Below, in pieces: positions 20,598-59,580 of a DNA stretch of 64,000 nt; within the stretch, counting starts at the first letter, position 1; every line of letters starts with the position of its first letter. The stretch is taken from assembly GCF_006345805.1 (NCBI RefSeq), contig NC_043001.1, positions 19,282,001 through 19,346,000 of the forward strand, in the 5' to 3' direction. The stretch comes from Octopus sinensis (taxonomy: Eukaryota). Made by a program: the position numbers and the translations under genes. Below the pieces are notes generated by a model. It made no database searches. It was not told the origin of the DNA and saw nothing but the letters and a program-made list of their open reading frames with translations.

Positions 20598-22648
20598 TTA
20601 TATTCTGGTGACTATTTCCAGCAGTTATAAAAAATGTTTTAAAGCGCTCAGAAAGCAGTAATGTCATTCTTGATTTACTCAGCTAACTTGTTATGTACAG
20701 CTGTCAATAATAAAAGCGTCATAACTCATGAGGTCATTAAAAAAATCGTTTAAAGGTTTACGACACGTTCTGTATCGACAGTTGTAGTTGTTAAACTTCA
20801 GGTCAGCACTGATCAGTCTGACATGTTATCATAGACAACCTTGACGTGAATATCCCGTTAAAGACTATATTTTTCTTCCTTATTTATTCCTAAAGGCAGT
20901 ATGAAGGAGATATGATTGTTGTGAGTCAACAAAGTGGAAAGTACATTTCGTTCACGAATCATTCTTTTGCTAAGTGATAGTCAATAATCTTACTTAGCTG
21001 ATCGGTTGCTGTGTTCTTTTTACATAAACCAGCAGCTTCTAGCTTTTAACTAATTGTACATGGCGGACTTCTCTGCTTAGTTACCATTGTGTAGTACCGT
21101 AGTGTGGTTTGTCAGTTAAATAACTAAACTGAGTGCAAACGAATGACGTCTGCTTCAAAGATGCTTCTACTTGTCTTCAAATTGTTTGTATGGTAGTATC
21201 ACTGTCGATGCACCATAAACCAAACAAAACATAACACGTCTCGGTAAACCATTGCAAACATATCACTTGTCGCTATTAATACATTACAATACCAATAAAT
21301 GCAGTAAACATAATAGTGGGATACATTTATTATATATGTGGTGGATCTTGCAAGCATGAAGTGAATTCGATCCACCATAGCCAAATTTAAATTAACACTG
21401 CAACAGAACTTTTCCCACGGTGGAACAATGGTTCTTCTCTGACAGCAGTTTTACATTTTCCAGATGCCTTTAGCTAGGCCGAAATAATGTCTTCACCGCT
21501 TGACCCTTTCTAACCTTTTCTACTTCACCAAAAGCTAGAATAGAGATAACAAAACCACCAACTAAATCTATTGTTCTCGGTGATATATCTATCCTTCTGG
21601 ATAGTTATATAAGCAAGCACACCCCAAGCAAAAATCAGTTAGTCACAGGCTGACCAGCTAGAACCTTGGTCAGAGGGAGAAATGAAGATTACTGTCAGCA
21701 ACTGTGAGGCAACGTCCCAAACCCTACAACTCTCACTAGCTCTAATTCTGTTCTCTTACATTATTCTATCTCTCTCCGCAATTACTACTAAACAATAAAT
21801 AGAACTCAAACACAAACGTTACTTCGCATGCTTTTGGATTTATCGTAACCTGCCCGTCGAGGCAAGGTATTGTAACGTAACGGTAAATAAATATTTCCTT
21901 AAAACTTCATGCATTGTCCATCTTTCACATCTTACAACTTGCCGTCATAACAACAAAACTTTAACGCTTACAACTGGTGACCTCGAACAAAAGACTTGCA
22001 GCTTTCCCAAGAACCAACCGTTACAAACAGGCGACCCCAACGTTGCACCATAACAGGCATCGCTACAAAAATAAAACAACGCCCCCCCCCCTGCTACAAT
22101 TGGTGACCCTCGACTTCAACTAAACACTTTATCGTTACATATATGAATGGTAACATATCATAAGACTGGATTCTAGTGAGGATTGTCAAGCTCCTCTCAT
22201 CAAACTGGCCCTTTGATTAAATGCAGGTTAATTCAGTGAGGTTTTTTTTTGTTTTTTTTCAGGGAAAAAGTGCGTTTTGTGAGCCGGGATATGTGATAAT
22301 TGTTTCCGTTATGTTTACGATTTAATTGCCAATGTTGGGATACGAACTTATGTATTTCTGAATCGTCAGTCCAACAATCTTTCGACTCGCCCAGCTGTTA
22401 CACACAGCTGACGTGTACATTTATTTCAACTCCTAATAAACAATATTGATTTTTCTGTCTTCTTAGTGCGAGGTTCATATTATTGCAAAGTTTATTATAT
22501 CATTAATTAACTTTATTTTAGTATATTTATTGATTTCTTCCTTGTACCTAAGGCCACGTATTTTGGGTGAGGGTGAGGGCATATAGTTTACAATAAAGTG
22601 GTGATTTGACTTAGTTGTTAGAATGTCGGATAGATTGCGTTCAAATAC

Positions 22649-23128
22649 CTATTTCTTTACTACCCACAAGGGGCTAAACACAGAGAGGACAAACAAGGAC
22701 AGACAAACGGATTAAGTCGATTATATCGACCTCAGTGCGTAAATGGTACTTATTTAATCGACCCCGAAAGGATGAAAGGTAAAGTCAACCTCGGCGGAAT
22801 TTGAACTCAGAACGCAGCGCCAAACGAAATACTGCTGAGCATTTCGCCCGGCGTGCTAACGTTTCTGCCAGCTCGCTGCCTCTGCGTTCAAATACCTATT
22901 TCTTTATTACCCACAAGGGGCTAAACACAGAGGGGACAAACAAGGACAGACATAGGTATTAAGTCGATTATATCGACCCCAGTGCGTAACTGGTACTTAA
23001 TTTATCGACCCCGAAATGATGAAAGGCAAAGTCGACCTCGGCGGAATTTGAACTCACAACGTAACGGCAGACGAAATACTGTTGAGCACTTCGCCCGGCG
23101 TGCTAACGTTTCTGCCAGCTCGCCGCCT
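22649..23128 (-). mobile_element. Two head-to-tail SINE family B copies
   Basis: Copies at 22649-22880 and 22896-23128. tgcgttcaaatac occurs at 22636, 22883 and 23130. Confidence 0.9.
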
Positions 23129-24294
23129 CTGCGTTCAAATACCGCGAGGTCAAATTGGTCTTTCGTGCTTTCGAAGTTAATAAATAAAGTACCACGAGTG
23201 TTCCGGACCCCCAGCAATGAACTCATTTGCATACAGCCACCTTGACCTTGTTGTCAAGTTAGCAAACACAATCTACCAAGCAAACTCAAGATGAAGAACG
23301 GTGTTGTAAGTCGACCGATCGCCAAGTTATGCCTGATTTTAGAAGGAGACAAGTAATTAGATAGATTTGCATCTATACCTATTATCGGATTTTGTTAGGG
23401 CCCCATATGGTAAAGATGTGGATGGGGAAGATGTGGGTAGAGGGTGATGTGCTACCAACCCATTCCCCTTACTGTTTTAGAAAGTATACAACAACACAAA
23501 TAACTACGCAGAGGCAGCCACGGTTGAAACAAGAACAACAACAAGAAGCAATATTAAAAGAGAAAAGAATGGTCATTCCTTGCCCAAGTGACCTTATTTT
23601 ATCGCCCATCACTTGTTATGCGTTCATAAATTAGTTTGATAGTTCAGCTCTGGTTGGCTTATGCAAGTGAGTTCATAACTGGAGTCCGGAACTCTCGTGG
23701 AAAAAAAAATTTCGTGCCTGGCTGCACATCTAGTTACATCTTGCTGCTAATAGCAATCCATCGACGGAGATAACAGCGTCGATCCTAGGTATTCATCCTC
23801 CTCTTCCACCTCCAGCTCATTGTTTCTTATGAGATCAGACATGGTTGACAAGGCTGATACTTGATGGGCAGATCCTGTGATAGTGAGGGCACTGAAAGTA
23901 ACCCTGAACAACAACCGTACGCAGTTGCGGATGCAGGGGCGTTGCCCTAGTTACCCGGGCAGCGAACTTTTTCCAACGAGAGTTCTAGATCCCAGTTATC
24001 AAAAGGATCTTTTCTGTTTGGTTTTCATTTTCCAATTCCTTTAATTTCGTTCCAATTGATTTCAAATTTTGTGTATTGATGTAGTTTTGTATGCTAATTA
24101 TGGAAATGAAATTCATTTTGTCCCATAAATTAATAAATAAATAAAAAGTTAATAACTTTTGCACTTTGGAAATGTTGGGTAATTTTAGCCAATCGAAAGC
24201 CACAGACATCATATAGGTACCTGTTTCCATAGTAACAAGCAAAAGTATACTTTTATCCAGGGGTGGACTGAAAGTATTAAGGGCCCTTTTCCTC

Positions 24295-24560
24295 AACCGA
24301 TCCAGCTCTCTTTAAAACCATAGCAAAATACGTCAAAATGGAAACGGGTCCCATAAAATTCAAAAGTTCACTGAACAAATTTCTTCAAAAAATCCCAGAC
24401 CAACCTCTTACACCCGGATATCTCTCCCACTATAATCGCTCTTTGCTAGAGTGAGCCATGGTTCCCTATATATGACTAAAAAACTTCACCAGGTGGTGCT
24501 ATTAAGTTAGATATGGCCGGGGCCTGTACTGGCGGAAATCTATCTAAGTTATCAAAGTTA
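24295..24560 (+). mobile_element. CR1-clade LINE extreme 3' fragment
   Basis: TDPALFKTIAKYVKMETGPIKFKSSLNKFLQKIPDQPLTPGY, followed by the same caggtggtgctattaagttag 3' UTR as 6133-6200. Confidence 0.75.
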
Positions 24561-24645
24561 GTATGAAGAAAAAAATTCTTGGCAGGAACATTTACTGGCG
24601 GTGCTCCCGAAAAGGATGCAAGGAGGTGTGTGTGTGTGTGTGTCC

Positions 24646-27600
24646 CCGAAAAGATAAGTGGTTGGAAGGAGGTACCCTTCCATTTAGGACTGTACTGCTC
24701 TTTTTCCTTTACTCATATGTGTCAAGCAATTGACTTCAGTTCGGTTTTGTGTTGAAGAAGTGAGGATGAGTCACTTGTACAGCTGTTGATTACAATAGCT
24801 GTGTTCGTGAAGTACGTGCGGAGGACCTGCTCCGCCATCCTGTTCAGATAAGCGGTCCTTGGAAGATTGTTGAGGTAGATGAAACCTAGGGTCCTACCTA
24901 GTTGAGGTAGATGAAACCTAGGGTCCTACCTAGTTGAGGTAGATTAAACCTAGGGTCCTAACTAGTTGAGGTAAATGAAACCTGGGTCCTACCTAGTTGA
25001 GGTAGGCGAAACCTAGGGTCCTAACTAGTTGAGGTAGATGAAACCTAGGGTCCTACCTAGTTGAGGTAGGTGAAACCTAGGGTCCTACCTAGTTGAGGTA
25101 GATGAAACCTAGGGTCCTAACTAGTTGAGGTAAATGAAACCTGGGTCCTACCTAGTTGAGGTAGGTGAAACCTAGGGTCCTAACTAGTTGAGGTAGATGA
25201 AACCTGGGTCCTACCTAGTTGAGGTAGATGAAACCTGGGTCCTACCTAGTTGAGGTAGGTGAAACCTAGGGTCCTAACTAGTTGAGGTAGATGAAACCTA
25301 GGGTCCTACCTAGTTGAGGTAGGTGAAACCTAGGGTACTACCTAGTTGAGGTAGATGAAACCTAGGGTCCTAACTAGTTGAGGTAAATGAAACCTGGGTC
25401 CTACCTAGTTGAGGTAGGTGAAACCTAGGGTCCTAACTAGTTGAGGTAGATGAAACCTAGGGTCCTACCTAGTTGAGGTAGGTGAAACCTAGGGTCCTAC
25501 CTAGTTGAGGTAGATGAAACCTAGGGTCCTAACTAGTTGAGGTAAATGAAACCTGGGTCCTACCTAGTTGAGGTAGATGAAACCTGGGTCCTACCTAGTT
25601 GAGGTAGGTGAAACCTAGGGTCCTAACTAGTTGAGGTAGATGAAACCTAGGGTCCTAACTAGTTGAGGTAGGTGAAACCTAGGGTCCTACCTAGTTGAGG
25701 TAGATGAAACCTAGGGTCCTAACTAGTTGAGGTAAATGAAACCTGGGTCCTACCTAGTTGAGGTAGGTGAAACCTAGGGTCCTAACTAGTTGAGGTAGAT
25801 GAAACCTGGGTCCTACCTAATTGAGGTAGATGAAACCTGGGTCCTACCTAGTTGAGGTAGGTGAAACCTAGGGTCCTAACTAGTTGAGGTAGATGAAACC
25901 TAGGGTCCTAACTAGTTGAGGTAGGTGAAACCTAGGGTCCTACCTAGTTGAGGTAGATGAAACCTAGGGTCCTAACTAGTTGAGGTAAATGAAACCTGGG
26001 TCCTACCTAGTTGAGGTAGGTGAAACCTAGGGTCCTAACTAGTTGAGGTAGATGAAACCTAGGGTCCTACCTAGTTGAGGTAGGTGAAACCTAGGGTCCT
26101 ACCTAGTTGAGGTAGATGAAACCTAGGGTCCTAACTAGTTGAGGTAAATGAAACCTGGGTCCTACCTAGTTGAGGTAGGTGAAACCTAGGGTCCTAACTA
26201 GTTGAGGTAGATGAAACCTGGGTCCTACCTAGTTGAGGTAGGTGAAACCTAGGGTCCTACCTAGTTGAGGTAGATGAAACCTAGGGTCCTAACTAGTTGA
26301 GGTAAATGAAACCTGGGTCCTACCTAGTTGAGGTAGGTGAAACATAGGGTCCTAACTAGTTGAGGTAGATGAAACCTGGGTCCTACCTAGTTGAGGTAGG
26401 TGAAACCTAGGGTCCTACCTAGTTGAGGTAGATGAAACCTAGGGTCCTAACTAGTTGAGGTAGGTGAAACCTAGGGTCCTACCTAGTTGAGGTAGATGAA
26501 ACCTAGGGTCCTAACTAGTTGAGGTAGGTGAAACCTAGGGTCCTACCTAGTTGAGGTAGATGAAACCTAGGGTCCTAACTAGTTGAGGTAAATGAAACCA
26601 AGGGTCCTACCTAGTTGAGGTAGGTGAAACCTAGGGTCCTACCTAGTTGAGGTAGGTGAAACCTAGGGTCCTAACTAGTTGAGGTAGGTGAAACCTAGGG
26701 TCCTACCTAGTTGAGGTAGATGAAACCTAGGGTCCTAACTAGTTGAGGTAGGTGAAACCTAGGGTCCTACCTAGTTGAGGTAGATGAAACCTAGGGTCCT
26801 AACTAGTTGAGGTAAATGAAACCAAGGGTCCTACCTAGTTGAGGTAGGTGAAACCTAGGGTCCTACCTAGTTGAGGTAGGTGAAACCTAGGGTCCTAACT
26901 AGTTGAGGTAGATGAAACCTAGGGTCCTACCTAGTTGAGGTAGGTGAAACCTAGGGTCCTACCTTGTTGAGGTAGATGAAACCTAGGGTCCTAACTAGTT
27001 GAGGTAAATGAAACCAAGGGTCCTACCTAGTTGAGGTAGGTGAAACCTAGGGTCCTACCTAGTTGAGGTAGATGAAACCTAGGGTCCTAACTAGTTGAGG
27101 TAGGTGAAACCTAGGGTCCTAACTAGTTGAGGTAGATGAAACCTGGGTCCTACCTAGTTGAGGTAGGTGAAACCTAGGGTCCTACCTAGTTGAGGTAGAT
27201 GAAACCTAGGGTCCTACCTAGTTGAGGTAGGTGAAACCTAGGGTCCTAACTAGTTGAGGTAGATGAAACCAAGGGTCCTACCTAGTTGAGATAGATGAAA
27301 CCTAGGGTCCTACCTAGTTGAGGTAGGTGAAACCTAGGGTCCTAACTAGTTGAGGTAGGTGAAACCTAGGGTCCTACCTAGTTGAGGTAGATGAAACCTA
27401 GGGTCCTACCTAGTTGAGGTAGGTGAAACCTAGGGTCCTACCTAGTTGAGGTAGATGGAACCTAGGGTCCTAACTAGTTGAGGTAGATGAAACCTGGGTC
27501 CTACCTAGTTGAGGTAGGTGAAACCTAGGGTCCTAACTAGTTGAGGTAGATGAAACCAAGGGTCCTACCTAGTTGAGGTAGATGAAACCTGGGTCCTACC

Positions 27601-30600
27601 TAGTTGAGGTAGATGAAACCTAGGGTCCTACCTAGTTGAGGTAGATGAAACCTAGGGTCCTAACTAGTTGAGGTAAATGAAACCTGGGTCCTACCTAGTT
27701 GAGGTAGGTGAAAACTAGGGTCCTCCCTAGTTGAGGTAGATGAAACCTAGGGTCCTAACTAGTTGAGGTAGATGAAACCTAGGGTCCTACCTAGTTGAGG
27801 TAGGTGAAACCTAGGGTCCTACCTAGTTGAGGTAGATGAAACCTAGGGTCCTAACTAGTTGAGGTAAATGAAACCTGGGTCCTACCTAGTTGAGGTAGGT
27901 GAAACCTAGGGTCCTAACTAGTTGAGGTAGATGAAACCTAGGGTCCTACCTAGTTGAGGTAGGTGAAACCTAGGGTCCTAACTAGTTGAGGTAGATGAAA
28001 CCTGGGTCCTACCTAGTTGAGGTAGGTGAAACCTAGGGTCCTACCTAGTTGAGGTAGATGAAACCTAGGGTCCTAACTAGTTGAGGTAGATGAAACCTGG
28101 GTCCTACCTAGTTGAGGTAGGTGAAACCTAGGGTCCTACCTAGTTGAGGTAGATGAAACCTAGGGTCCTAACTAGTTGAGGTAGATGAAACCTGGGTCCT
28201 ACCTAGTTGAGGTAGGTGAAACCTAGGGTCCTACCTAGTTGAGGTAGGTGAAACCTAGGGTCCTAACTAGTTGAGGTAGATGAAACCTGGGTCCTACCTA
28301 GTTGAGGTAGGTGAAACCTAGGGTCCTACCTAGTTGAGGTAGATGAAACCTAGGGTCCTAACTAGTTGAGGTAAATGAAACCTGGGTCCTACCTAGTTGA
28401 GGTAGGTGAAACCGAGGGTCCTAACTAGTTGAGGTAGATGAAACCTGGGTCCTACCTAGTTGAGGTAGGTGAAACCTAGGGTCCTACCTAGTTGAGGTAG
28501 ATGAAACCTAGGGTCCTAACTAGTTGAGGTAAATGAAACCTGGGTCCTACCTAGTTGAGGTAGGTGAAACCTAGGGTCCTAACTAGTTGAGGTAGATGAA
28601 ACCTGGGTCCTACCTAGTTGAGGTAGGTGAAACCTAGAGTCCTAACTAGTTGAGGTAGATGAAACCTGGGTCCTACCTAGTTGAGGTAGGTGAAACCTAG
28701 GGTCCTACCTAGTTGAGGTAGGTGAAACCTAGGGTCCTAACTAGTTGAGGTAGATGAAACCTAGGGTCCTACCTAGTTGAGGTAGGTGAAACCTAGGGTC
28801 CTAACTAGTTGAGGTAGATGAAACCAAGGGTCCTACCTAGTTGAGATAGATGAAACCTAGGGTCCTACCTAGTTGAGGTAGGTGAAACCTAGGGTCCTAC
28901 CTAGTTGAGGTAGGTGAAACCTAGGGTCCTACCTAGTTGAGGTAGGTGAAACCTAGGGTCCTACCTAGTTGAGGTAGGTGAAACCTAGGGTCCTACCTAG
29001 TTGAGGTAGATGAAACCTAGGGTCCTAACTAGTTGAGGTAGATGAAACCTGGGTCCTACCTAGTTGAGGTAGGTGAAACCTAGGGTCCTAACTAGTTGAG
29101 GTAGATGAAACCAAGGGTCCTACCTAGTTGAGGTAGATGAAACCTGGGTCCTACCTAGTTGAGGTAGATGAAACCTAGGGTCCTACCTAGTTGAGGTAGA
29201 TGAAACCTGGGTCCTACCTAGTTGAGGTAGGTGAAACCTAGGGTCCTAACTAGTTGAGGTAGATGAAACCTAGGGTCCTACCTAGTTGAGGTAGGTGAAA
29301 CCTAGGGTCCTAACTAGTTGAGGTAGATGAAACCAAGGGTCCTACCTAGTTGAGATAGATGAAACCTAGGGTCCTACCTAGTTGACGTAGGTGAAACCTA
29401 GGGTCCTAACTAGTTGAGGTAGGTGAAACCTAGGGTCCTACCTAGTTGAGGTAGATGAAACCTAGGGCCCTACCTAGTTGATGTAGGTGAAACCTAGGGT
29501 CCTACCTATTTGAGGTAGATGAAACCTAGGGTCCTACCTAGTTGAGGTAGGTGAAACCTAGGGTCCTACCTAGTTGAGGTAGGTGAAACCTAGGGTCCTA
29601 ACTAGTTGAGGTAGATGAAACCAAGGGTCCTACCTAGTTTGAGATAGATGAAACCTAGAGTCCTACCTAGTTGAGGTAGGTGAAACCTAGGGTCCTACCT
29701 AGTTGAGGTAGATGAAACCTAGGGTCCTACCTAGTTGAGGTAGGTGAAACCTAGGGTCCTACCTAGTTGAGGTAGATGAAACCTAGGGTCCTACCTAGTT
29801 GAGGTAGGTGAAACCTAGGGTCCTACCTAGTTGAGGAAGGTGAAACCTAGGTTCCTAACTAGTTGAGGTAGATGAAACCAAGGGTCCTACCTAGTTGAGA
29901 TAGATGAAACCTAGGGTCCTACCTAGTGGGGGTAGGTGAAACCTAGGGTCCTAACTAGTTGAGGTAGGTGAAACCTAGGGTCCTACCTAGTTGAGGTAGA
30001 TGAAACCTAGGGTCCTAACTAGTTGAGGTAGGTGAAACCTAGGGTCCTAACTAGTTGAGGTAGATGAAACCTAGGGTCCTACCTAGTTGAGGTAGGTGAA
30101 ACCTAGGGTCCTACCTAGTTGAGGTAGGTGAAACCTAGGGTCCTAACTAGTTGAGGTAGATGAAACCAAGGGTCCTACCTAGTTGAGATAGATGAAACCT
30201 AGGGTCCTACCTAGTTGAGGTAGGTGAAACCTAGGGTCCTAACTAGTTGAGGTAGGTGAAACCTAGGGTCCTACCTAGTTGAGGTAGATGAAACCTAGGG
30301 TCCTAACTAGTTGAGGTAGGTGAAACCTAGGGTCCTAACTAGTTGAGGTAGATGAAACCTAGGGTCCTACCTAGTTGAGGTAGGTGAAACCTAGGGTCCT
30401 ACCTAGTTGAGATAGGTGAAACCTAGGGTCCTAACTAGTTGAGGTAGATGAAACCTAGGGTCCTACCTAGTTGAGGTAGGTGAAACCTAGGGTCCTAACT
30501 AGTTGAGGTAGATGAAACCTGGGTCCTACCTAGTTGAGGTAGATGAAACCTAGGGTCCTACCTAGTTGAGGTAGATGAAACCTAGGGTCCTACCTAGTTG

Positions 30601-33600
30601 AGGTAAATGAAACCTGGGTCCTACCTAGTTGAGGTAGGTGAAACCTAGGGTCCTACCTAGTTTAGGTAGGTGAAACCTAGGGTCCTAACTAGTTGAGGTA
30701 GATGAAACCTAGGGTCCTACCTAGTTGAGGTAGGTGAAACCTAGGGTCCTAACTAGTTGAGGTAGATGAAACCAAGGGTCCTACCTAGTTGAGATAGATG
30801 AAACCTAGGGTCCTACCTAGTTGAGGTAGGTGAAACCTAGGGTCCTAACTAGTTGAGGTAGGTGAAACCTAGGGTCCTACCTAGTTGAGGTAGATGAAAC
30901 CTAGGGTCCTACCTAGTTGAGGTAGGTGAAACCTAGGGTCCTACCTAGTTGAGGTAGATGAAACCTAGGGTCCTAACTAGTTGAGGTAGATGAAACCTGG
31001 GTCCTACCTAGTTGAGGTAGGTGAAACCTAGGGTCCTAACTAGTTGAGGTAGATGAAACCAAGGGTCCTACCTAGTTGAGGTAGATGAAACCTGGGTCCT
31101 ACCTAGTTGAGGTAGATGAAACCTAGGGTCCTACCTAGTTGAGGTAGATGAAACCTGGGTCCTACCTAGTTGAGGTAGGTGAAACCTAGGGTCCTAACTA
31201 GTTGAGGTAGATGAAACCTAGGGTCCTACCTAGTTGAGGTAGGTGAAACCTAGGGTCCTAACTAGTTGAGGTAGATGAAACCAAGGGTCCTACCTAGTTG
31301 AGATAGATGAAACCTAGGGTCCTACCTAGTTGACGTAGGTGAAACCTAGGGTCCTAACTAGTTGAGGTAGGTGAAACCTAGGGTCCTACCTAGTTGAGGT
31401 AGATGAAACCTAGGGCCCTACCTAGTTGATGTAGGTGAAACCTAGGGTCCTACCTATTTGAGGTAGATGAAACCTAGGGTCCTACCTAGTTGAGGTAGGT
31501 GAAACCTAGGGTCCTACCTAGTTGAGGTAGGTGAAACCTAGGGTCCTAACTAGTTGAGGTAGATGAAACCAAGGGTCCTACCTAGTTTGAGATAGATGAA
31601 ACCTAGAGTCCTACCTAGTTGAGGTAGGTGAAACCTAGGGTCCTACCTAGTTGAGGTAGATGAAACCTAGGGTCCTACCTAGTTGAGGTAGGTGAAACCT
31701 AGGGTCCTACCTAGTTGAGGTAGATGAAACCTAGGGTCCTACCTAGTTGAGGTAGGTGAAACCTAGGGTCCTACCTAGTTGAGGAAGGTGAAACCTAGGG
31801 TCCTAACTAGTTGAGGTAGATGAAACCAAGGGTCCTACCTAGTTGAGATAGATGAAACCTAGGGTCCTACCTAGTGGGGGTAGGTGAAACCTAGGGTCCT
31901 AACTAGTTGAGGTAGGTGAAACCTAGGGTCCTACCTAGTTGAGGTAGATGAAACCTAGGGTCCTAACTAGTTGAGGTAGGTGAAACCTAGGGTCCTAACT
32001 AGTTGAGGTAGATGAAACCTAGGGTCCTACCTAGTTGAGGTAGGTGAAACCTAGGGTCCTACCTAGTTGAGGTAGGTGAAACCTAGGGTCCTAACTAGTT
32101 GAGGTAGATGAAACCAAGGGTCCTACCTAGTTGAGATAGATGAAACCTAGGGTCCTACCTAGTTGACGTAGGTGAAACCTAGGGTCCTAACTAGTTGAGG
32201 TAGGTGAAACCTAGGGTCCTACCTAGTTGAGGTAGATGAAACCTAGGGTCCTAACTAGTTGAGGTAGGTGAAACCTAGGGTCCTAACTAGTTGAGGTAGG
32301 TGAAACCTAGGGTCCTACCTAGTTGAGGTAGGTGAAACCTAGGGTCCTACCTAGTTGAGGTAGGTGAAACCTAGGGTCCTAACTAGTTGAGGTAGATGAA
32401 ACCTAGGGTCCTACCTAGTTGAGGTAGGTGAAACCTAGGGTCCTAACTAGTTGAGGTAGATGAAACCTGGGTCCTACCTAGTTGAGGTAGATGAAACCTA
32501 GGGTCCTACCTAGTTGAGGTAGATGAAACCTAGGGTCCTACCTAGTTGAGGTAAATGAAACCTGGGTCCTACCTAGTTGAGGTAGGTGAAACCTAGGGTC
32601 CTACCTAGTTTAGGTAGGTGAAACCTAGGGTCCTAACTAGTTGAGGTAGATGAAACCTAGGGTCCTACCTAGTTGAGGTAGGTGAAACCTAGGGTCCTAA
32701 CTAGTTGAGGTAGATGAAACCAAGGGTCCTACCTAGTTGAGATAGATGAAACCTAGGGTCCTACCTAGTTGAGGTAGGTGAAACCTAGGGTCCTAACTAG
32801 TTGAGGTAGGTGAAACCTAGGGTCCTACCTAGTTGAGGTAGATGAAACCTAGGGTCCTACCTAGTTGAGGTAGGTGAAACCTAGGGTCCTACCTAGTTGA
32901 GGTAGATGAAACCTAGGGTCCTAACTAGTTGAGGTAGATGAAACCTGGGTCCTACCTAGTTGAGGTAGGTGAAACCTAGGGTCCTAACTAGTTGAGGTAG
33001 ATGAAACCAAGGGTCCTACCTAGTTGAGGTAGATGAAACCTGGGTCCTACCTAGTTGAGGTAGATGAAACCTAGGGTCCTACCTAGTTGAGGTAGATGAA
33101 ACCTGGGTCCTACCTAGTTGAGGTAGGTGAAACCTAGGGTCCTAACTAGTTGAGGTAGATGAAACCTAGGGTCCTACCTAGTTGAGGTAGGTGAAACCTA
33201 GGGTCCTAACTAGTTGAGGTAGATGAAACCAAGGGTCCTACCTAGTTGAGATAGATGAAACCTAGGGTCCTACCTAGTTGAGGTAGGTGAAACCTAGGGT
33301 CCTAACTAGTTGAGGTAGGTGAAACCTAGGGTCCTACCTAGTTGAGGTAGATGAAACCTAGGGCCCTACCTAGTTGAGGTAGGTGAAACCTAGGGTCCTA
33401 CCTAGTTGAGGTAGATGAAACCTAGGGTCCTACCTAGTTGAGGTAGGTGAAACCTAGGGTCCTACCTAGTTGAGGTAGGTGAAACCTAGGGTCCTAACTA
33501 GTTGAGGTAGATGAAACCAAGGGTCCTACCTAGTTGAGATAGATGAAACCTAGGGTCCTACCTAGTTGAGGTAGGTGAAACCTAGGGTCCTACCTAGTTG

Positions 33601-34646
33601 AGGTAGATGAAACCTAGGGTCCTACCTAGTTGAGGTAGGTGAAACCTAGGGTCCTACCTAGTTGAGGTAGATGAAACCTAGGGTCCTATCTAGTTGAGGT
33701 AGGTGAAACCTAGGGTCCTCCCTAGTTGAGGTAGGTGAAACCTAGGGTCCTAACTAGTTGAGGTAGATGAAACCAAGGGTCCTACCTAGTTGAGATAGAT
33801 GAAACCTAGGGTCCTACCTAGTTGAGGTAGGTGAAACCTAGGGTCCTAACTAGTTGAGGTAGGCGAAACCTAGGGTCCTACCTAGTTGAGGTAGATGAAA
33901 CCTAGGGTCCTAACTAGTTGAGGTAGGTGAAACCTAGGGTCCTAACTAGTTGAGGTAGGTGAAACCTAGGGTCCTACCTAGTTGAGGTAGGTGAAACCTA
34001 GGGTCCTACCTAGTTGAGGTAGGTGAAACCTAGGGTCCTAACTAGTTGAGGTAGATGAAACCAAGGGTCCTACCTAGTTGAGATAGATGAAACCTAGGGT
34101 CCTACCTAGTTGAGGTAGGTGAAACCTAGGGTCCTAACTAGTTGAGGTAGGTGAAACCTAGGGTCCTACCTAGTTGAGGTAGATGAAACCTAGGGTCCTA
34201 ACTAGTTGAGGTAGGTGAAACCTAGGGTCCTAACTAGTTGAGGTAGATGAAACCTAGGGTCCTACCTAGTTGAGGTAGGTGAAACCTAGGGTCCTACCTA
34301 GTTGAGGTAGGTGAAACCTAGGGTCCTAACTAGTTGAGGTAGATGAAACCTAGGGTCCTACCTAGTTGATGTAGGTGAAACCTAGGGTCCTAACTAGTTG
34401 AGGTAGATGAAACCTGGGTCCTACCTAGTTGAGGTAGATGAAACCTAGGGTCCTACCTAGTTGAGGTAGATGAAACCTAGGGTCCTACCTAGTTGAGGTA
34501 AACGAAACCTAGGGTCCTAACTAGTTGAGGTAGATGAAACCTAGGGTCCTACCTAGTTGAGGTAGGTGAAACCTGGGTCCTACCTAGTTGAGGTAGATGA
34601 AACCTGGGTCCTACCTAGGCAGTAAGTTTTCGGTGGAGTGTGTTGC
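24646..34646 (+). pseudogene. Merlin (IS1016/ISXO2-like) DDE transposase relic split by a satellite array
   Basis: Left of the array, across frameshifts: RKDKWLEGGTLPFRTVLLFFLYS / TSVRFCVEEVRMS / CTAVDYNSCVREVRAEDLLRHPVQISGPWKIVEVDET. Right of the array: Q*VFGGVCC (34620-34646). These match the Merlin motifs GGPG.IVE.DES and QWVFGG.C in the correct order, from recalled family knowledge. Confidence 0.8.
24869..34618. repeat. Satellite/minisatellite array, 31/32-bp monomer, ~9.75 kb, about 305 copies
   Basis: Consensus gttgaggta(g/a)rtgaaacct(a)gggtccta(c/a)cta, continuous from 24869 to 34618. Confidence 0.98.
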
Positions 34647-36014
34647 GTAAATTTAGTAGACGAAAACTGTGTGGATACCTGTTGTATGTGTATGTGTGAG
34701 TGTGTATGTTTGTGTATGTATGTGTGTGTGTGTGTGTGTGCGCGCGCGCGTGTGTGTGTGTGTGTGCGTGTGTGTGCGTGTGTGTGTGTGTGTGTATGCG
34801 TGCGTGCGTATGCATACGTGGGTATATGCGTGCGTGTATGTTTATCTCCTTTCCATCGACTGACATCCAGTAACAAGAGACCGATAGCAAAAGTACCAGA
34901 CTTTTAAAAGAAAAACAAGGAATTAAGTCGATTTGTTCGACTAAACCCTTCAAGAAGTTCCCTTGCGTGGTCCCAGTTCAATGACTGAAACAAGTAAAAG
35001 ATAAAAGTTACTCATATCAATTCAACCAAGTTCGCCAATTCTTCAACGAAAATTTACTTCGAGCCCGAATCAGAAAAGTCTCACTGTGCCGTTATGCCTC
35101 TTTAAAATCGGTTCGACTTTCTATGAACAGCAGCCACATCACCTTCTAGTCTTCAAAAAGGAAGAAGCGCATTGAATCATGTAATTCTAGTTATACTATG
35201 CCTTAGGATAATGTAGTATAGTCATAGTCACGTCTTTGATCAGAAATAAATTCGCTGTTAGGTAGCACGAGAGTATAGGACAAACTTTTTAAAATCTAGC
35301 AACCTGAATCATTCGGAGATAAATGTCTTTTCTAAGGACACTGGATAGCCTGAATGACAAAATATCGTTAATTATTGCTCCTTAGACTTGACGCTATGCT
35401 GTCAAGGTCAACTGATTAAAATACAGGAATATGCGGTGCTGTAAATATCTTCTGCTCTACAAACAAATTCACAGATAATAAATAAATTGACATTTATGTT
35501 ATTACGTAGTTTGAATTGTTCAACAGTTTATAAGTCTTACCGAAAGGGTATGTCATCGGTCGTTTCTTCTTAAAATGTCTGGCATTTTTCTTTTCTTATC
35601 CTTATTATTCAATCTTTAAGTTATGTTTGTTTTGCTTTAAAACTGTGGCTTTACTTTACACAAACAAAAAGGAAAAAAGTTACAACTACTTCAATGACAT
35701 GGAAGCGATTGATTTCAGCAATGAGGCATTGCAGTTATTGCTTATCCAAAGATTAGCCCTGATAGAAAAGACTTATTATCAACGGTATAGCTGTGACCAT
35801 CCCATCTGGTTTTCAAACAGTGCGCCGGGGATTTTGGAAAAATACAACTTTTAGTTTCATAAAAAACCACACTAATGCATGAGTGTTTTGAAAAACGTGT
35901 TATTTACCATTTTGTTAAACACAACTGTGATTAATAAAACAAGGTAAGCTATAGTTTCCTATATATTTGCGAAATATCGTGTTTATCTTTTACGTGTTTA
36001 GTCGGACAAATCAA

Positions 36015-36390
36015 GGATCTTTACCTTTTGACCTACAGATTTACAATATAATTTTTTGTAATTAAACACTTTCAAACTTCGGACACTGGTAGAATGTGTC
36101 ATATAAAACATCTTTTACTCGTAGCGTTTTTGAGAAAAGCTTATATTTACGAAGTTATTTCACGTTAAAGTTGTCCTATTTCAGTAATTTCAACCAATCA
36201 ATGACGTGTATTCAGCTGAATAAAATTACTGCCGTTGTTTGTCAACAAGAACTTCCAGCGGTGTATATTTCGTTTGTCACTCTTATTTATAACAACCCTA
36301 ACCCTAAAACCTGAGCCCTAACCCTAACCCTAAAACCTTAACCCTAAAACCTTAAAACCAGTACAAATGCACGAACGATGTAAAGATCCC
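36015..36390. mobile_element. MITE-like element related to the 12884 arm, with a (CCCTAA)-like tract
   Basis: ggatcttt...aaagatcc ends, a shared aaccaatcaatgacgtgtattcag block, and degenerate ccctaa repeats at 36295-36355. Confidence 0.6.
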
Positions 36391-38240: not shown

Positions 38241-38892
38241 AATATTTATTCCTTGATTCGCAATATAAACATTTCTTTCTTCTGGGCGAATCAGCAGCCT
38301 AGGAGCTTATCAGCAGTAGTCAAGTGGAGTGAGTCAATATTGCCCGTTCAAGCATAGCGGAGAGGCGCCACGAGGTAGCAGCTTGAGAGAGCTGCTGGAC
38401 ACATGTCTGTCTTGTTCAGCTGCTAGCGTCAAAGAGAGAGATACAGGAGAATTTCACTGCTGCTAGTTTTCTGTGCATGCGCATGAGAGAAATTCCGGAT
38501 GGCCTTCCGGAAGATTGCAACCCTGCGCATGCATGCTGGAGATTTCCAAGACGACCTCTCTACAAGCTTTTGTGCACATTGGAAGGCAAACATAATAATA
38601 CAAAACCCTTCCATAGTTAATCAAACATATATGAGTACCATCTGTTAATCTCATACACTATCCAGATGTATGAACAGGACATGTAAACTCACAAATGGGC
38701 AGCGAAACAAATATATTTGTGAGAGAACATATAGAAAATACAATTACAAATCAGAATAGGAAGATAAATTTCAAGTGATAGCAATAAAGGTTTGTGTGAG
38801 GCTTAAGGAATATGTGCTAGAGTTTACCTGAAGCCATATTGTAAAGGCTGAGTCAATAACTAGGGTCAAGTGGTGACACATAGTTGATTAGG

Positions 38893-39122
38893 CAGCAACC
38901 TGGCAGAAACGTTAGCACGCCGGGCGAAATGCGTAGCCGTATTTCGTCTGCCGCTACGTTCTGAGTTCAAATTCCGCTGAGGTCGACTTTGCCTTTCATC
39001 CTTTCGGGGTCGATAAATTAAGTACCAGTTACGTACTGAGGTCGATATAATCGACTTAATCCGTTTGTCTGTCCTTGTTTGTCCCTCTGTGTTTAACCCC
39101 TTGTGGGTAGTAAATAAATAGG
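38893..39122 (+). mobile_element. SINE family B
   Basis: ggcagaaacgttagcacgccgggcgaaatg...gtgggtagtaaataaatagg. Confidence 0.9.
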
Positions 39123-39540
39123 TTAGTGTTGTGGTCAGTAGTCACACACATCAAACTAAATTGTTCTGGCCACCATTCACTGCATTCATTTCTGTCCCTA
39201 TATCTGACCATCTCTCACTATTTTATATACTTGCAAACCAACCCAACCAGCTAACCCTTCAACCTCTGTCCCCTGTTTTCTTGGAGTTATAATAATACTT
39301 CATTGAATAAACAACATCATCAGTTATGTTAATACTTGATCTCGAAGAATATTTACATTATTTTGATAACAACCTCATTAAATTTATAATTAAACATTAT
39401 ATTTAGTATTCAGATTGTATCAAAATTGTTTTGATCCCACTTCTAGTTGAAATTTCATCATCATCATCATCATCATCATTTAATATTAGTGGCATGGGTT
39501 GGAGGGTATGCTAGGACCAGAGGATTGCATTAACCTCTAA

Positions 39541-40574: not shown

Positions 40575-40929
40575 ATCATCATGATCATCATCATCATCGT
40601 CGTCATCATCATCATCATCATTGTCATCATCATCGTCGTCATCGTCGTCGTCATCATCATCATCATCATCGTCATCATCATCATCATCATCATCGTCATC
40701 GTCATCGTCATCATCATCGTCGTCATCGTCATCATCATCGTCATCGTCATCGTCATCGTCATCATCATCGTCGTCGTCGTCGTCATTATCATCATCATCA
40801 TCATCATCGTCATCATCATCATCGTCGTCGTCATCGTCGTTGTCGTCATCATCATCATCGTCATCATCGTCATCATCATCTTCATCATCATCATCGTCGT
40901 CGTCATCATCGTCATCATCATCGCCGCCG

Positions 40930-40960
<31 letters not shown>

Positions 40961-40962
40961 TA
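40575..40962. repeat. (CAT/CGT)n trinucleotide tract, ~390 bp
   Basis: Continuous in-phase CAT with interspersed CGT. Explains the poly-H, S, I and M/T ORFs. Confidence 0.95.
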
Positions 40963-41322
40963 TCTTAATCCTCATTTAATGTCCAACTTTCCGTGCTGGC
41001 ATGGGTTTGATGATTTGACAGGAGCTGGCTAGGCAGGCAGAAGACTGCACCAGGCTTCAGTGTCTGTTTTTTTTTTAATTTTTGTTTTTGTTTGTTATGG
41101 CTGAATGCCCTTCCTAACACCAACCACCCCCACAGAGTGGACTCTGAAGGTAATTGGAGACAATACCAAATTAAACATTGTGTCAAACGAATTATATTAA
41201 AAACGAGTTTTACATTTCATTTCAGCAGAAACCATCAGCGGTTATTTTGCTCCAAGAACTAAAACGTAACCAATTCACATCTCTAAATGAAGAGAAAAAA
41301 CTATTGAAATACAGTTGAGTAG

Positions 41323-41566: not shown

Positions 41567-42972
41567 AATTTAAATGTGATTTGCAGAGATGTACTTGCAT
41601 AGCAAGTGACCTGACCTGAGATCGTGTGCTGAAACAAAAACAATTGCAGCATGGAAGGTGTTTATAAGCCATTTGAAAAACTGTTAGATTCACTTCAACA
41701 TTTAAATTTTAATTTGTCAAAATATTTTCATCGCTTTGAAACCGTGATCCGTTCGCTGACAAAATCCAATTTAAATGTGATTTGCAGAGATGTACTTGCA
41801 TAGCAAGTGACCTGACCTGAGATCGTGTGCTGAAACAAAAACAATTGCAGCATGGAAAGTGTTTATAAGCCATTTGAAAAACTGTTAGATTCACTTCAAC
41901 ATTTAAATTTTAATTTGTCAAAATATTTTCATCGCTTTGAAACCGTGATCCGTTCGCTGACAAAATCCAATTTAAATGTGATTTGCAGAGATGTACTTGC
42001 ATAGCAAGTGACCTGACCTGAGATCGTGTGCTGAAACAAAAACAATTGCAGCATGGAAAGTGTTTATAAGCCATTTGAAAAACTGTTAGATTCACTTCAA
42101 CATTTAAATTTTAATTTGTCAAAATATTTTCATCGCTTTGAAACCGTGATCCGTTCGCTGACAAAATCCAATTTAAATGTGATTTGCAGAGATGTACTTG
42201 CATAGCAAGTGACCTGACCTGAGATCGTGTGCTGAAACAAAAACAATTGCAGCATGGAAAGTGTTTATAAGCCATTTGAAAAACTGTTAGATTCACTTCA
42301 ACATTTAAATTTTAATTTGTCAAAATATTTTCATCGCTTTGAAACCGTGATCCGTTCGCTGACAAAATCCAATTTAAATGTGATTTGCAGAGATGTACTT
42401 GCATAGCAAGTGACCTGACCTGAGATCGTGTGCTGAAACAAAAACAATTGCAGCATGGAAAGTGTTTATAAGCCATTTGAAAAACTGTTAGATTCACTTC
42501 AACATTTAAATTTTAATTTGTCAAAATATTTTCATCGCTTTGAAACCGTGATCCGTTCGCTGACAAAATCCAATTTAAATGTGATTTGCAGAGATGTACT
42601 TGCATAGCAAGTGACTTGATCTGAGATCCTGTGCTGAAACAAAAACAATTGCAGCATGGAAGGTGTTTATAAGCCATTTGAAAAACTGTTAGATTCACTT
42701 CAACATTTAAATTTAATTTGTCAAAATATTTTCATCGCTTTGAAACCGTGATCCGTTCACTGACAAAATCCAATTTAAATGTGATTTGCAGAGATGTACT
42801 TGCATAGCAAGTGACTTGATCTGAGATCCTGTGCTGAAACAAAAACAATTGAAGCATGGAAGGTGTTTATAAGCCATTTGAAAAACTGTTAGATTCACTT
42901 CAACATTTAAATTTAAATTTGTCAAAATATTTTCATCGCTTTGAAACCGTGACCTGTTCACTGACAAAATCC
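41567..42972. repeat. Tandem repeat, 201-bp unit x7
   Basis: aatttaaatgtgatttgcagag recurs at 41567, 41768, 41969, 42170, 42371, 42572 and ~42772. Explains the repeated 61-aa ORFs. Confidence 0.97.
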
Positions 42973-43048
42973 CATGTGACATGGAATTTTATCAGTGAAC
43001 AGGTCACGGTTTCAAAGCAACAAAAATATTTTGACAAATTAAATTTAA

Positions 43049-44357: not shown

Positions 44358-45306
44358 GTTTCTTTATTAGCCACACAGGGCTGCACACAGATAGAACAAA
44401 TTACAAGGTAGAGCTTTTCTTTTGGAGGTAAAAAAAAAATAAATAAAATAAAAATAAAAATTTTTAAAAAAAAGGGGGGGGTCGATCAAAAGGGATCGTA
44501 AAAGGAGAGAAAGAGGACAAAAAAAGGGGGGGGTTAAAAAAAAAAAGGGGGAGAGGAAAAAAATTGATCAATAGGGATCGTTATCACAGAAATGTCAATA
44601 TGAAGTGTAAAGGGGAGGACAGGTGAGGTTTACCCATGGAAAGAAAACCCTACGGAAAAGACCACGGTAACCTCGGTCAATGAAGTCACATGTTATATTT
44701 CTTTTTTTTTTTTTTTGCAAATAAGCAACTCTCTGTATTAATTTTTACGGTTCATAGAATCATAGTCAAGGTGGCTTCGTCATTCATACGTGCCATCCTT
44801 GCTACATTCACCCATCTTTTTTTAAAACATTCACTAGACAAAACTTGCCTCTCTACTCTCACTTTTTTCTTCAAGTGATACTTGAAGAAGTTGATGAGAG
44901 ATTGACCAGAGAGGAAAGTGTTTGTCTCTAATCCTTTCAGACGCGTCCACCAGATACATTCTTTCGCCATAGCCACAAGTATGATAAAAATAGCGCTTCC
45001 TTCCCGTTTGAAGGAAGGAGGCGTGACGATATTAACGATAGACTCGGCTGATAAACCGACACATCCCACACGTGACAGCAGTCGTTCGACATAAGCCCAC
45101 AGGTGGGAAATTGCCGGACACTGCACGATTGCGTGCAGAGCGGTTTCGTCGCTCTGCCCGCATCTCGGGCAGGTCGGCCTGGTGTTTCTCGAGCCATGCC
45201 TATAGAGCTTATCCCGAACGGGTAGTGCTTCTCGGTAGCACCGCCAGGCCAGGGATCTCTGGAAGTTGTCCATAGGTCCCGGGCCGAAAGTCGTTTGAAA
45301 CAGGCG

Positions 45307-45393
<87 letters not shown>

Positions 45394-45530
45394 CAATGGG
45401 CTTCTTTCAGTTTCCATGTACCAAATCTACTCACAAGGCTTTGGTTGCCCCAAGGTTATAGTAAAAGGCACTTGCCCAAGGTGCCATGCAGTGGGAATGA
45501 ACCTGGGAATGAACCAAACTTCTTACTTCG
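44110..45530 (-). mobile_element. SINE family A split by a Tx1-like insertion
   Basis: 3' half at 44110-44330 and 5' half at 45395-45530, in colinear order. Confidence 0.8.
44359..45307 (-). mobile_element. 5'-truncated Tx1/L1-clade LINE (ORF2 C-terminus with CCHC zinc knuckle plus 3' UTR)
   Basis: LAWRCYREALPVRDKL...CPRCGQSDETALHAIVQC...WAYV...IW is a zf-RVT pattern with an open frame to the stop at 44752. The 3' UTR ends AATAAAGAA. Confidence 0.85.
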
Positions 45531-58490: not shown

Positions 58491-59296
58491 TCCTAAGCCT
58501 TGTGACACCCAAGAGCAAGTAAGCAATGTTTAGGTCATTTTTTATAGACCCCCCTCCCTATGAAGAGGAAAGCAGTGCCATCCTAAAAAGGGCTGCTTTG
58601 TTATGAAAGGAGGACACGAGTCACACAATTACTTGCGGGTGTTGTGCAAAACGACCATCAACCTTCCACCACCTGTGTGCAATGTTCCTGTTAGGAACTA
58701 CCAGTGACATCCTTCACCTGTTCCCGTCACAATCCCATCATCGCCATAGGATTTAATAAAAAAAAATTTAAAAAAACATACATCGATGCGCCAAACCTCA
58801 GGTGTTATTGAGTGAAAATGGTTTACTGAACAACCGGCACTTTGACTTGTTTAAAGTGGTCATTGCTTGTGCTGAACAAAGCACACTCTCTCCATCGAAT
58901 TATCATGGTCTGTACAGGTGCACGGTGTGCCACACGTCAGATGATAAAACGATCGCAGGATTTTCTTGTAAGAGTGTTCCGTCTCCTAGATCAGTTGTGA
59001 GACTCAACACCAAAGTCTGGTAGGTTTTCTGCGCGCCTGAGCACCATACCAGGTATTTCTAGGTCCTCGCCTATATACCAGGTATTTCTAGGTCCACTCC
59101 TATATATATATATGTATATCATCATCAACATCATCATCATCGTTTAATGTCCGTTCTCCATGCTCGCATGGGTTGGATGGTTCGACCGGGGATCTGGGAA
59201 GCCAGAAGGCTGCACCAGGCTCCAGTCTTATCTGTCAATGTTTCTACAGCTGGATGCCCTTCCTAATGCCAACCACTCCGTGAGTGTAGTGGGTGC

Positions 59297-59580
59297 TTTT
59301 TACGTGCCACCCGCACAGGTGCCAGGCGAGGCTGGCATCGGCCACGGTCGGATTGGTGCATTTTACGTGCCACCGGCACGGAAGCCAGTCGAGGCAGCAC
59401 TGGCATCGGCCACGATTCGGATGGTGCTTTTTACGTGCCACCTGCACAGAAGCCAGTCGAGGCGGCACTGGCATCGGCCACGATTCGGATGGTGCTTTTT
59501 ACATGCCACCAGCACGGAAGCCAGTCGAGGCGGCGCTGGCATCGGCCACAATTCGGATAGTGCTTTTTACGTACCACCTA
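59297..59580. repeat. ~68-bp minisatellite (about 4 copies) inside an RTE-related 3' UTR
   Basis: ttttacgtgccacc recurs at ~59297, 59361, 59429, 59497 and 59565. Confidence 0.85.

What the first reader, a model, noticed from the sequence alone, without database searches (positions are those of the whole stretch)
24646..34646. A ~9.75-kb satellite born from the catalytic-Asp codons of a Merlin transposase
Seen: the first monomer continues in frame from ...PVQISGPWKI into VEVDET (gtt gag gta gat gaa acc), and right after the last monomer comes Q*VFGGVCC. The ~15 residues normally found between DE(S/T) and QWVFGG in Merlin transposases are missing, replaced by ~14 nt (ctagggtcctacct). Inference: a deletion or rearrangement created a 31/32-bp seed that amplified about 300-fold in place, with both flanks preserving its birthplace. 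Transposon-derived satellites are known, but one seeded from a DDE active-site codon block with intact flanks is unusual.
Basis: partly seen in the sequence, partly recalled or inferred. Interest (0 to 1): 0.8.

Follow-up and report, generated by a model that had tools for sequence, protein, structure and literature searches.

The report
Tandem array grown from Merlin transposase codons
A 9.75-kb block of about 306 head-to-tail copies of a 31/32-base unit grew inside a dead Merlin transposon gene, and the unit is a piece of that gene's active-site region; it is a tidy example of a known way that repeat arrays arise, not a new kind of element.

Summary
The array is real: 24869-34618, period 31/32 nt, 306 copies, found nowhere else in the window. 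The left flank (24557-24868) is a decayed N-terminal part of a Merlin/ISXO2-like transposase. A profile built from PF12762-bearing proteins gives E=3e-19 against all six-frame pieces of the window.

The first 18 nt of every monomer are the VE(I/V)DE(S/T) block that holds the first catalytic Asp. They are the native codons (R)VLP that lie just before QWVFGG in the closest Merlin subfamily. So the whole monomer is transposase ORF spanning a 29-30-nt (10-codon) internal deletion.

The right remnant is only about 26 nt (RQ*VFGGVC). A SINE follows it, and the rest of the DDE domain is absent from the window.

Growth came in stages. There is a 5-monomer pattern on the left, and three 1948-bp blocks (98.9-99.6% identical) make up 60% of the array.

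Pfam alone gives no hit, because too little of the domain survives. A transposase-ORF origin for satellite monomers has a precedent (CACTA tnp2 in Chenopodium), and Merlin elements are known to carry internal repeats. This is a new member of a known kind. Whether it is a single locus could not be tested.

The parts
24557..24868 (+). Decayed N-terminal part of a Merlin/ISXO2-like transposase (subfamily profile positions 36-134). It has three in-frame stops and a short (TG)n expansion.
   Evidence: The subfamily profile gives E=3e-19 among 2130 six-frame pieces, with the next unrelated piece at E=1.8. The general full-length profile gives E=1.2e-14. BLASTP to P0204 (PF12762) gives E=3e-17, 35% identity over 121 aa.
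24626..24643 (.). (TG)n microsatellite inside the transposase remnant. It reads VCVCVC and makes a 3-residue insertion relative to the profile.
   Evidence: Sequence; 18-nt match to other TG tracts; alignment insertion.
24869..34618 (+). Tandem array of 306 monomers of 31/32 nt: GTTGAGGTAG[A/G]TGAAACC[T|TA|AA]GGGTCCTA[C/A]CTA.
24869..24886 (+). First 18 nt of the first monomer, the VEVDET codons. This is block 1 of the DDE domain and holds the first catalytic Asp. It is in frame with the left flank.
   Evidence: Adding these six residues raises the profile score from 37.2 to 52.1 bits. D78 is at least 90% conserved and E79 is invariant in alignment A1.
28680..34523 (+). Three tandem copies of a 1948-bp, 61-monomer higher-order block: 28680-30627, 30628-32575, 32576-34523.
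   Evidence: Pairwise identity is 98.9-99.6%, against 93.9-94.4% at other offsets.
34587..34618 (+). Last monomer (31-nt type, 34587-34617) plus base 34618. With it the frame runs VEVDET-WVLPR straight into the right remnant.
34619..34644 (+). Right remnant of the transposase ORF: (R)Q*VFGGVC, matching the subfamily QQWVFGG[IV]C.
   Evidence: [VI]FGG occurs once in all six frames of the 64 kb, and it is here. The right side adds 15.5 bits over shuffled controls.
34645..35005 (+). 3' part of a dispersed SINE with its internal (TG)n at 34683-34806. It replaces the rest of the transposase.
   Evidence: The SINE motif ATTTGGTAGACGGAAACTG occurs 14 times in the window, including 34651-34669. The copy alignment is and tail matches are.

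Best explanation
A Merlin (IS1595/ISXO2-like) DNA transposon of a roughly 293-aa transposase subfamily inserted here and decayed.

A 29-30-nt internal deletion removed the codons for about LFSRRKNNVG. This joined the active-site block VE(V)DET directly to the codons RVLP(R/Q)Q-W-VFGG.

The 31/32-nt stretch across that junction (18 nt VEVDET plus 13-14 nt (R)VLP) was then duplicated head to tail. Only about 1 nt of microhomology marks the junction, so this step was probably end-joining or template switching.

The array then expanded by replication slippage and unequal exchange. This produced a 5-monomer (159-bp) pattern, and later two duplications of a 1948-bp block, for 306 copies in total.

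The array is non-coding: every frame meets stops. It most likely has no function.

Shown here: the homology of both flanks and both monomer halves to the transposase ORF, the 10-residue gap, and the higher-order structure. Inferred: the order of events and the molecular mechanisms.
For: Array.

Flank identity:
- BLASTP to P0204 (PF12762, 66 bits in Pfam) gives E=3e-17. That alignment crosses the junction with one 10-residue gap.
- The general profile gives 37.2 bits without VEVDET and 52.1 with it.
- The subfamily profile gives 66.3 bits for the left flank alone and 81.9 for the joined flanks with a 10-X spacer. 10 is the best of 6-12 tried. Twenty shuffled-right controls give 65.7-66.4.
- Blind six-frame scan: E=3e-19, and nothing else scores in the window.

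Second half of the monomer is native:
- LP two residues before QW occurs in 69 of 114 subfamily members, and RVLPQQ in 40 of 114.
- The same feature occurs in only 1 of 222 instances in the broad family set. That one is P0204, which is independently the best match to the left flank.

Family membership of a relative: P0349 sits in an element with 28-nt TIRs starting GG and an 8-bp TSD GAATATTT.

Array edges: they carry the ancestral-like monomers (GAT and CCT), while the interior is dominated by derived GGT/ACT types.

Stepwise growth.

Precedents: PMC7320549, PMC8101967, PMC9659126.
Against: - Pfam and NCBIfam give no hit on the joined flanks at E<=10. A direct protein search with them also found nothing.
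- The right remnant alone is short: 7.8 bits, and E about 2 in a blind whole-window scan.
- No close (DNA-level) relative of this Merlin copy was available. The ancestral linker is therefore inferred from proteins about 35% identical.
- Whether the deletion was 29 or 30 nt, and whether the 31- or 32-nt unit came first, is unresolved.
- No TIR or TSD was found at this locus, and the C-terminal two-thirds of the transposase is missing.
- Single-locus status and true array length were not testable.
Confidence: 0.8

Rival explanations
1. The array is Merlin-ORF-derived but was not born at this locus. A deletion-derivative Merlin element already carrying a few monomers spread by transposition, and this is one of several arrays of a dispersed satellite-like family, as with the tnp2-derived satDNA of Chenopodium or repeat-bearing MITEs and Helentrons of bivalves.
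For: Merlin families often carry internal tandem repeats that could spread as proto-satellites (PMC8101967). In Chenopodium several arrays start at the transposase fragment (PMC7320549). Nothing here shows that the locus is unique.
Against: No second copy of the monomer, the flanks or any Merlin fragment is in the 64 kb. The element here has no recognisable ends and lacks its 3' two-thirds, so this copy at least is not mobile now. The public collections searched do not hold the host genome, so their zero hits are uninformative.
Confidence: 0.2
2. The array is an unrelated minisatellite that happens to lie in, or was inserted into, a Merlin fragment, and the resemblance of the monomer to VEVDET/RVLP is chance.
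For: The monomer is short. Pfam finds nothing. The right remnant is only about 26 nt.
Against: Both monomer halves match the two ORF segments expected on either side of a single 10-residue gap. They are in frame, in order and on the right strand. The gain is 15 bits for VEVDET and 15.5 bits for the right side, against about 0 for shuffles. VFGG is unique in 128,000 six-frame residues. The LP feature is subfamily-specific.
Confidence: 0.03
3. The size and higher-order structure are partly an assembly artefact: the true array is shorter or longer, and the three 1948-bp blocks are mis-assembled copies of one.
For: Near-identical 1.95-kb blocks (99.6%) in a 32-nt repeat are hard to assemble. No reads were available.
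Against: The blocks differ at 7-21 positions and share exact 1948-bp lengths in register. The left half has a different, internally consistent pattern.
Confidence: 0.1

Closest known systems
CficCl-61-40 satDNA of Chenopodium, generated from deletion derivatives of the tnp2 transposase domain of the CACTA-like element Jozin (PMC7320549)
   Same: A short (about 40 bp there, 31/32 nt here) fragment of a DNA-transposon transposase coding region serves as the start monomer. A deletion derivative is involved. The array abuts the remaining transposase sequence.
   Different: The superfamily differs (CACTA versus Merlin), and so does the host (plant versus animal-like genome). There it is a major, pan-chromosomal, multi-locus family. 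Here one array is seen and its genomic abundance is unknown. Here the monomer spans the deletion junction and includes the first catalytic Asp codon.
Internal tandem repeats of Merlin elements (PMC8101967)
   Same: Same superfamily. That paper notes tandem repeats inside many Merlin families and proposes them as proto-satellites.
   Different: Those repeats are described in non-coding 5'/3' or internal regions and have few units (2-5). Here the unit is ORF sequence from DDE block 1 and has 306 copies.
Tandem-repeat-bearing MITEs and Helentron-carried satDNA-like arrays of bivalve molluscs (PMC3879986, PMC7492417) and the Tetris foldback transposon satellite of Drosophila virilis (PMC4079207)
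   Same: Arrays that originate in and sit within DNA transposon derivatives.
   Different: Their monomers come from non-coding central or terminal repeats and are spread by the element. No mobility or dispersal is shown here.
ORF-derived satellites from retroelements (CR1 ORF2 HinfI repeat, L1 ORF2 PROsat, gag-derived E3900; review PMC9659126)
   Same: A TE coding sequence is the source of the monomers. The review notes this is rarer than a TIR, LTR or UTR origin.
   Different: Those are class I elements with longer monomers, and their birth junctions are not preserved to the nucleotide.

Membership tests
Merlin superfamily / IS1595-like (DDE_Tnp_IS1595) transposon: the flanks | Transposase homologous to proteins carrying PF12762 | tested here: met
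   BLASTP E=3e-17 to P0204, which scores 66 bits on PF12762 against a cut-off of 27. Profiles built from PF12762-bearing proteins give E=1.2e-14 and 3e-19 in blind six-frame scans.
Merlin superfamily / IS1595-like (DDE_Tnp_IS1595) transposon: the flanks | Direct Pfam PF12762 hit on the locus above the gathering score | tested here: not met
   No Pfam or NCBIfam hit at E<=10 on the joined flanks. PF12762 starts at the VEIDES block, and only about 25 residues of it, with a 10-residue gap, remain here.
Merlin superfamily / IS1595-like (DDE_Tnp_IS1595) transposon: the flanks | Complete DDE triad | tested here: not met
   Only block 1 (the first D) is present. No match to profile positions beyond about 165 exists anywhere in the window. 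This is a truncated pseudogene, not an intact element.
Merlin superfamily / IS1595-like (DDE_Tnp_IS1595) transposon: the flanks | TIRs beginning 5'-GG and an 8-9-bp target-site duplication | tested here: inconclusive
   No inverted repeat links the two flanks other than a dispersed 247-bp repeat. The 3' end is lost. In subfamily relative P0349 (L005) the feature is met: TIR GGTACTTGTCCACAATTCCCCCACCACC and TSD GAATATTT.
Minisatellite / satellite-like tandem array | Head-to-tail monomers with higher-order periodicity | tested here: met
   306 copies at 93% matches. A lag-5 monomer pattern and three 1948-bp blocks at 98.9-99.6% identity.
Satellite DNA family (genome-wide) | Many arrays or high genomic abundance, often heterochromatic | not testable with these tools
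   Only one 64-kb window is available. The public collections searched lack the host genome.
Transposase-ORF-derived satDNA (Chenopodium tnp2 type) | Monomer homologous to transposase coding sequence, with the transposase fragment acting as the first monomer | tested here: met
   The first monomer continues the ORF in frame, and both monomer halves map to ORF segments.
Transposase-ORF-derived satDNA (Chenopodium tnp2 type) | Recurrent association at several loci, with ongoing generation of monomers | not testable with these tools
   Needs the whole genome.

The most novel reading that the evidence does not exclude
This is a single-locus, recently expanded array (blocks 99.6% identical) caught at its birthplace. 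It would be the first case for the Merlin superfamily in which a tandem array can be traced to the nucleotide to a deletion junction inside the DDE active-site block of the transposase. That would make it a natural 'time-zero' model for how a unique sequence becomes a satellite.
Probability: 0.45. Interest if true: 0.45.

Novelty: new member of a known kind. Interest (0 to 1): 0.35.

Why it matters
Most TE-derived tandem repeats come from non-coding, already repetitive parts of elements such as TIRs, LTRs and UTRs (PMC9659126). Origins in a DNA-transposon coding region are few.

Here both junctions and both halves of the monomer can be assigned to specific codons of a transposase. This gives an unusually explicit reconstruction: insertion, deletion, seed duplication, then stepwise amplification.

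If the locus is unique and varies between individuals or sister species, it could be used to time and dissect the early growth of an array. It does not reveal a new mechanism or function.

Tried and rejected
- Pfam and NCBIfam on the joined flanks: no hit.
- Word-indexed protein search with the joined flanks: 3 candidates, none significant.
I therefore typed a consensus-like ISXO2 C-terminal sequence from memory, purely as bait, to pull real PF12762 proteins. All inference rests on the returned database proteins, not on the bait.
- Whole-frame six-frame hmmsearch was uninformative because the targets were 21,000 aa long. It was replaced by 180-aa pieces.
- First profile, from N-terminally truncated proteins: only 16 bits.
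- Search for TIRs as inverted repeats between the flanks found only a dispersed 247-bp SINE-like repeat with 11 copies.
- The idea that GTTGAGG microhomology (VEV / VEG) seeded the duplication was dropped. This subfamily has RVLPQQ, not VEGQ, before WVFGG.
- Exact-pattern scans for the monomer in metagenome, prokaryotic-genome and viral collections: 0 hits. This is uninformative for the host genome.
- Full-text search for monomer and SINE strings in papers: 0 hits.
- Host identification failed. An exact look-up of a 221-aa retroelement ORF was not on record. Rfam and tRNA scans were empty. From memory the SINE resembles octopus SINEs, but this is unverified.
Full report
**1. The observation**

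Tandem Repeats Finder reports a single array at 24869-34618: period 32, 306.0 copies, 93% matches. Splitting it gives 260 monomers of 32 nt, 44 of 31 nt and 2 of 33 nt.

The 18-nt core GTTGAGGTAGRTGAAACC occurs 306 times at up to 2 mismatches, against 0.02 expected. Every listed hit lies inside the array, and the count equals the monomer number. A BLAST of the monomer and both flanks against the array-masked window finds no other copy.

The array is richer in G+C (0.47) and has a stronger GC skew (+0.24) than its AT-rich, microsatellite-rich surroundings. No frame is open across it.

The left flank reads ...RHPVQISGPWKI and runs in frame into VEVDET at 24869-24886. After the last monomer the frame reads ...PRQ*VFGGVCC.

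**2. Are the flanks a Merlin transposase?**

Pfam and NCBIfam give nothing on the joined flanks at E<=10. A word-indexed protein search also found nothing. The exhaustive search would not accept a sequence with stops.

This returned 2455 proteins, all listed ones annotated PF12762. I aligned 18 of them (A1) and searched the 1.84-billion-protein representative set. That gave 24,429 members at E<=1e-3, including many full-length proteins of 290-345 aa.

A local HMM of 59 full-length proteins gave these scores:
- left flank without VEVDET: 37.2 bits (E 1e-13)
- left flank with VEVDET: 52.1 bits

In a blind scan of 2130 overlapping six-frame pieces of the whole window, only the pieces covering 24302-25201 score (E=1.2e-14). 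The next best piece has E=0.26.

The best single relative is P0204: 295 aa, PF12762 at 66 bits against a cut-off of 27. It aligns at E=3e-17, 35% identity over 121 residues. That alignment crosses the array site with one 10-residue gap:

- window: VEVDETWV----------LPRQ*VFGGVC
- P0204: VQIDESMFSRRKNNVGRCLPQQWVFGGVC

**3. What the monomer is**

A search seeded with P0204 returned a large subfamily: 722 proteins at E<=1e-10, with the listed ones about 250-345 aa (most about 290-297) and all carrying PF12762.

- In 114 of 114 members with the motif, the linker from DE[ST] to W is 16 residues.
- The consensus is DESLFSRRKNNVGRVLPQQWVFGGIC.
- RVLPQQ precedes W in 40 of 114, and LP..W occurs in 69 of 114.
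- In the broad family set, LP..W occurs in 1 of 222 instances. That one is P0204, which is independently the best match to the left flank.

The monomer's second half reads T AGG GTC CTA CCT A in the 32-nt form, which is R V L P. In the 31-nt form it reads TGG GTC CTA CCT A, which is W V L P. The flank continues GG CAG TAA GTT TTC GGT GGA GTG TGT, which is (R)Q*VFGGVC.

The whole monomer is transposase ORF spanning an internal deletion of about 10 codons (about LFSRRKNNVG).

Subfamily-profile scores:

| Construct | Score (bits) |
|---|---|
| Left flank alone | 66.3 |
| Joined flanks, 10-X spacer | 81.9 (best of 6-12 X tried) |
| 20 constructs with the right part shuffled | 65.7-66.4 |
| Right part alone | 7.8 (E 9e-5) |

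[VI]FGG occurs exactly once in the 127,996 six-frame residues of the window, at this junction.

The D of VE(I/V)DE(S/T) is the first residue of the DDE triad. In A1 it is at least 90% conserved. The invariant second D lies 62 residues on, and the invariant E a further 37. That this D is the catalytic residue rests on established knowledge of Merlin/IS1595 block 1 (Feschotte 2004, as summarised in PMC8101967).

Two histories fit equally well:
- a 29-nt deletion keeping one T of the next codon, with a 32-nt ancestor and the R codon AGG intact
- a 30-nt in-frame deletion with R changed to W, and a 31-nt ancestor

**4. What surrounds it**

The Merlin homology starts at about 24557 (profile position 36). 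It carries three in-frame stops and a small (TG)n expansion at 24626-24643.

On the right it lasts only to about 34644. From about 34645 the sequence is the 3' part of a dispersed SINE. The SINE motif ATTTGGTAGACGGAAACTG occurs 14 times in the window, including at 34651-34669. The alignment of copies, the internal (TG)n at 34683-34806 and the conserved tail place it to about 35005.

No part of the transposase beyond profile position about 165 exists anywhere in the 64 kb. No TIR or TSD could be recognised. This copy is therefore a 5' fragment.

A subfamily relative (P0349, locus L005) does show the textbook Merlin ends: 28-nt TIRs starting GG and an 8-bp duplication GAATATTT.

**5. How the array grew**

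Monomer types defined by three variable sites show structure. Counts for the Asp codon position are:
- GAT (Asp): about 148 monomers
- GGT: about 134
- AAT: about 17

The first two monomers and the last one carry the ancestral-like states (GAT, and CCT for Pro). The interior is dominated by derived GGT and ACT types. This is the usual picture of weaker homogenisation at array edges.

The left part shows a 5-monomer (159-bp) periodicity: lag-5 monomer identity is 96.5%, against 92-95% at other lags.

The right 60% is three tandem 1948-bp blocks of 61 monomers each: 28680-30627, 30628-32575 and 32576-34523. They are 98.9-99.6% identical, against 93.9-94.4% at other offsets. So the '300-fold amplification' was stepwise, and the last steps were recent duplications of about 2 kb.

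The seed junction shares only about 1 nt (G) between the unit end and the unit start. This points to end-joining or template switching for the first duplication, and to slippage or unequal exchange afterwards. These mechanisms are inferred, not shown.

**6. Comparison with what is known**

TE-derived tandem repeats are common. They mostly come from TIRs, LTRs or UTRs, and coding-region origins are fewer (PMC9659126).

The closest precedent is Chenopodium. There, deletion derivatives of the tnp2 transposase domain of a CACTA-like element supply a roughly 40-bp start monomer of the main satellite family (PMC7320549). Merlin elements have been noted to carry internal tandem repeats and were proposed as proto-satellite carriers (PMC8101967).

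I found no paper containing this monomer. I found no report of a Merlin ORF-derived array in the searches made.

The locus is therefore a new member of a known kind. With one array of 9.75 kb and a 32-nt unit, 'minisatellite' is the safer term until genomic abundance is known.

**7. Limits**

- The host genome was not available. Zero hits in the metagenome, prokaryote and viral collections say nothing about other loci.
- Host identity is unverified.
- Array length and block structure need spanning reads.

**8. Verdict**

The interest is moderate to low: it is a neat, unusually well-resolved example rather than a surprise.

Noticed in passing
window 41567-42972: Seven tandem copies of a 201-bp unit, the inner ones 99.5% identical. 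A partial inverted match lies at 42986-43048. No other copy is in the window.
   Followed up: partly
window 22647-23140, 38890-39123 and 8 further sites: A 247-bp SINE-like dispersed repeat with 11 copies in the window. It is present as a tandem dimer 1.7 kb left of the array and as an inverted copy 4.3 kb to its right. This looks like ordinary dispersal, not ends of an element.
   Followed up: yes
window 34645-35005 and 13 other sites (e.g. 9035, 17894, 37971, 43756, 48051): A second SINE family with a tRNA-like head, the motif ATTTGGTAGACGGAAACTG, an internal variable microsatellite and the tail ...AATGACTGAAACAAGTAAAAG. Many of the window's microsatellites sit inside its copies. From memory it resembles octopus SINEs, but this is unverified.
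   Followed up: partly
window 36294-36355: A short interstitial telomere-like tract (AACCCT)n of about 8-10 units, 1.7 kb right of the array.
   Followed up: no
window 40575-40975: A long (ATC)n trinucleotide tract of about 134 units at 83% purity.
   Followed up: no
window 44755-45417 (-): A 221-aa ORF with a zf-RVT domain (PF13966, 36 bits). It is the C-terminal remnant of a non-LTR retrotransposon ORF2 and runs into an (AGAT)n tract.
   Followed up: partly
window 59292-59578: A 68-bp unit repeated 4.3 times (88% matches) in a locally GC-rich stretch. Its origin is unknown.
   Followed up: no
L005 1991-2095 and 3528-3790: The Merlin relative P0349 has several subterminal copies of its TIR motif (CTTGTCCACAATTCCCCCACCACC) in both orientations inside each end. 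This may be an array of transposase-binding sites.
   Followed up: partly
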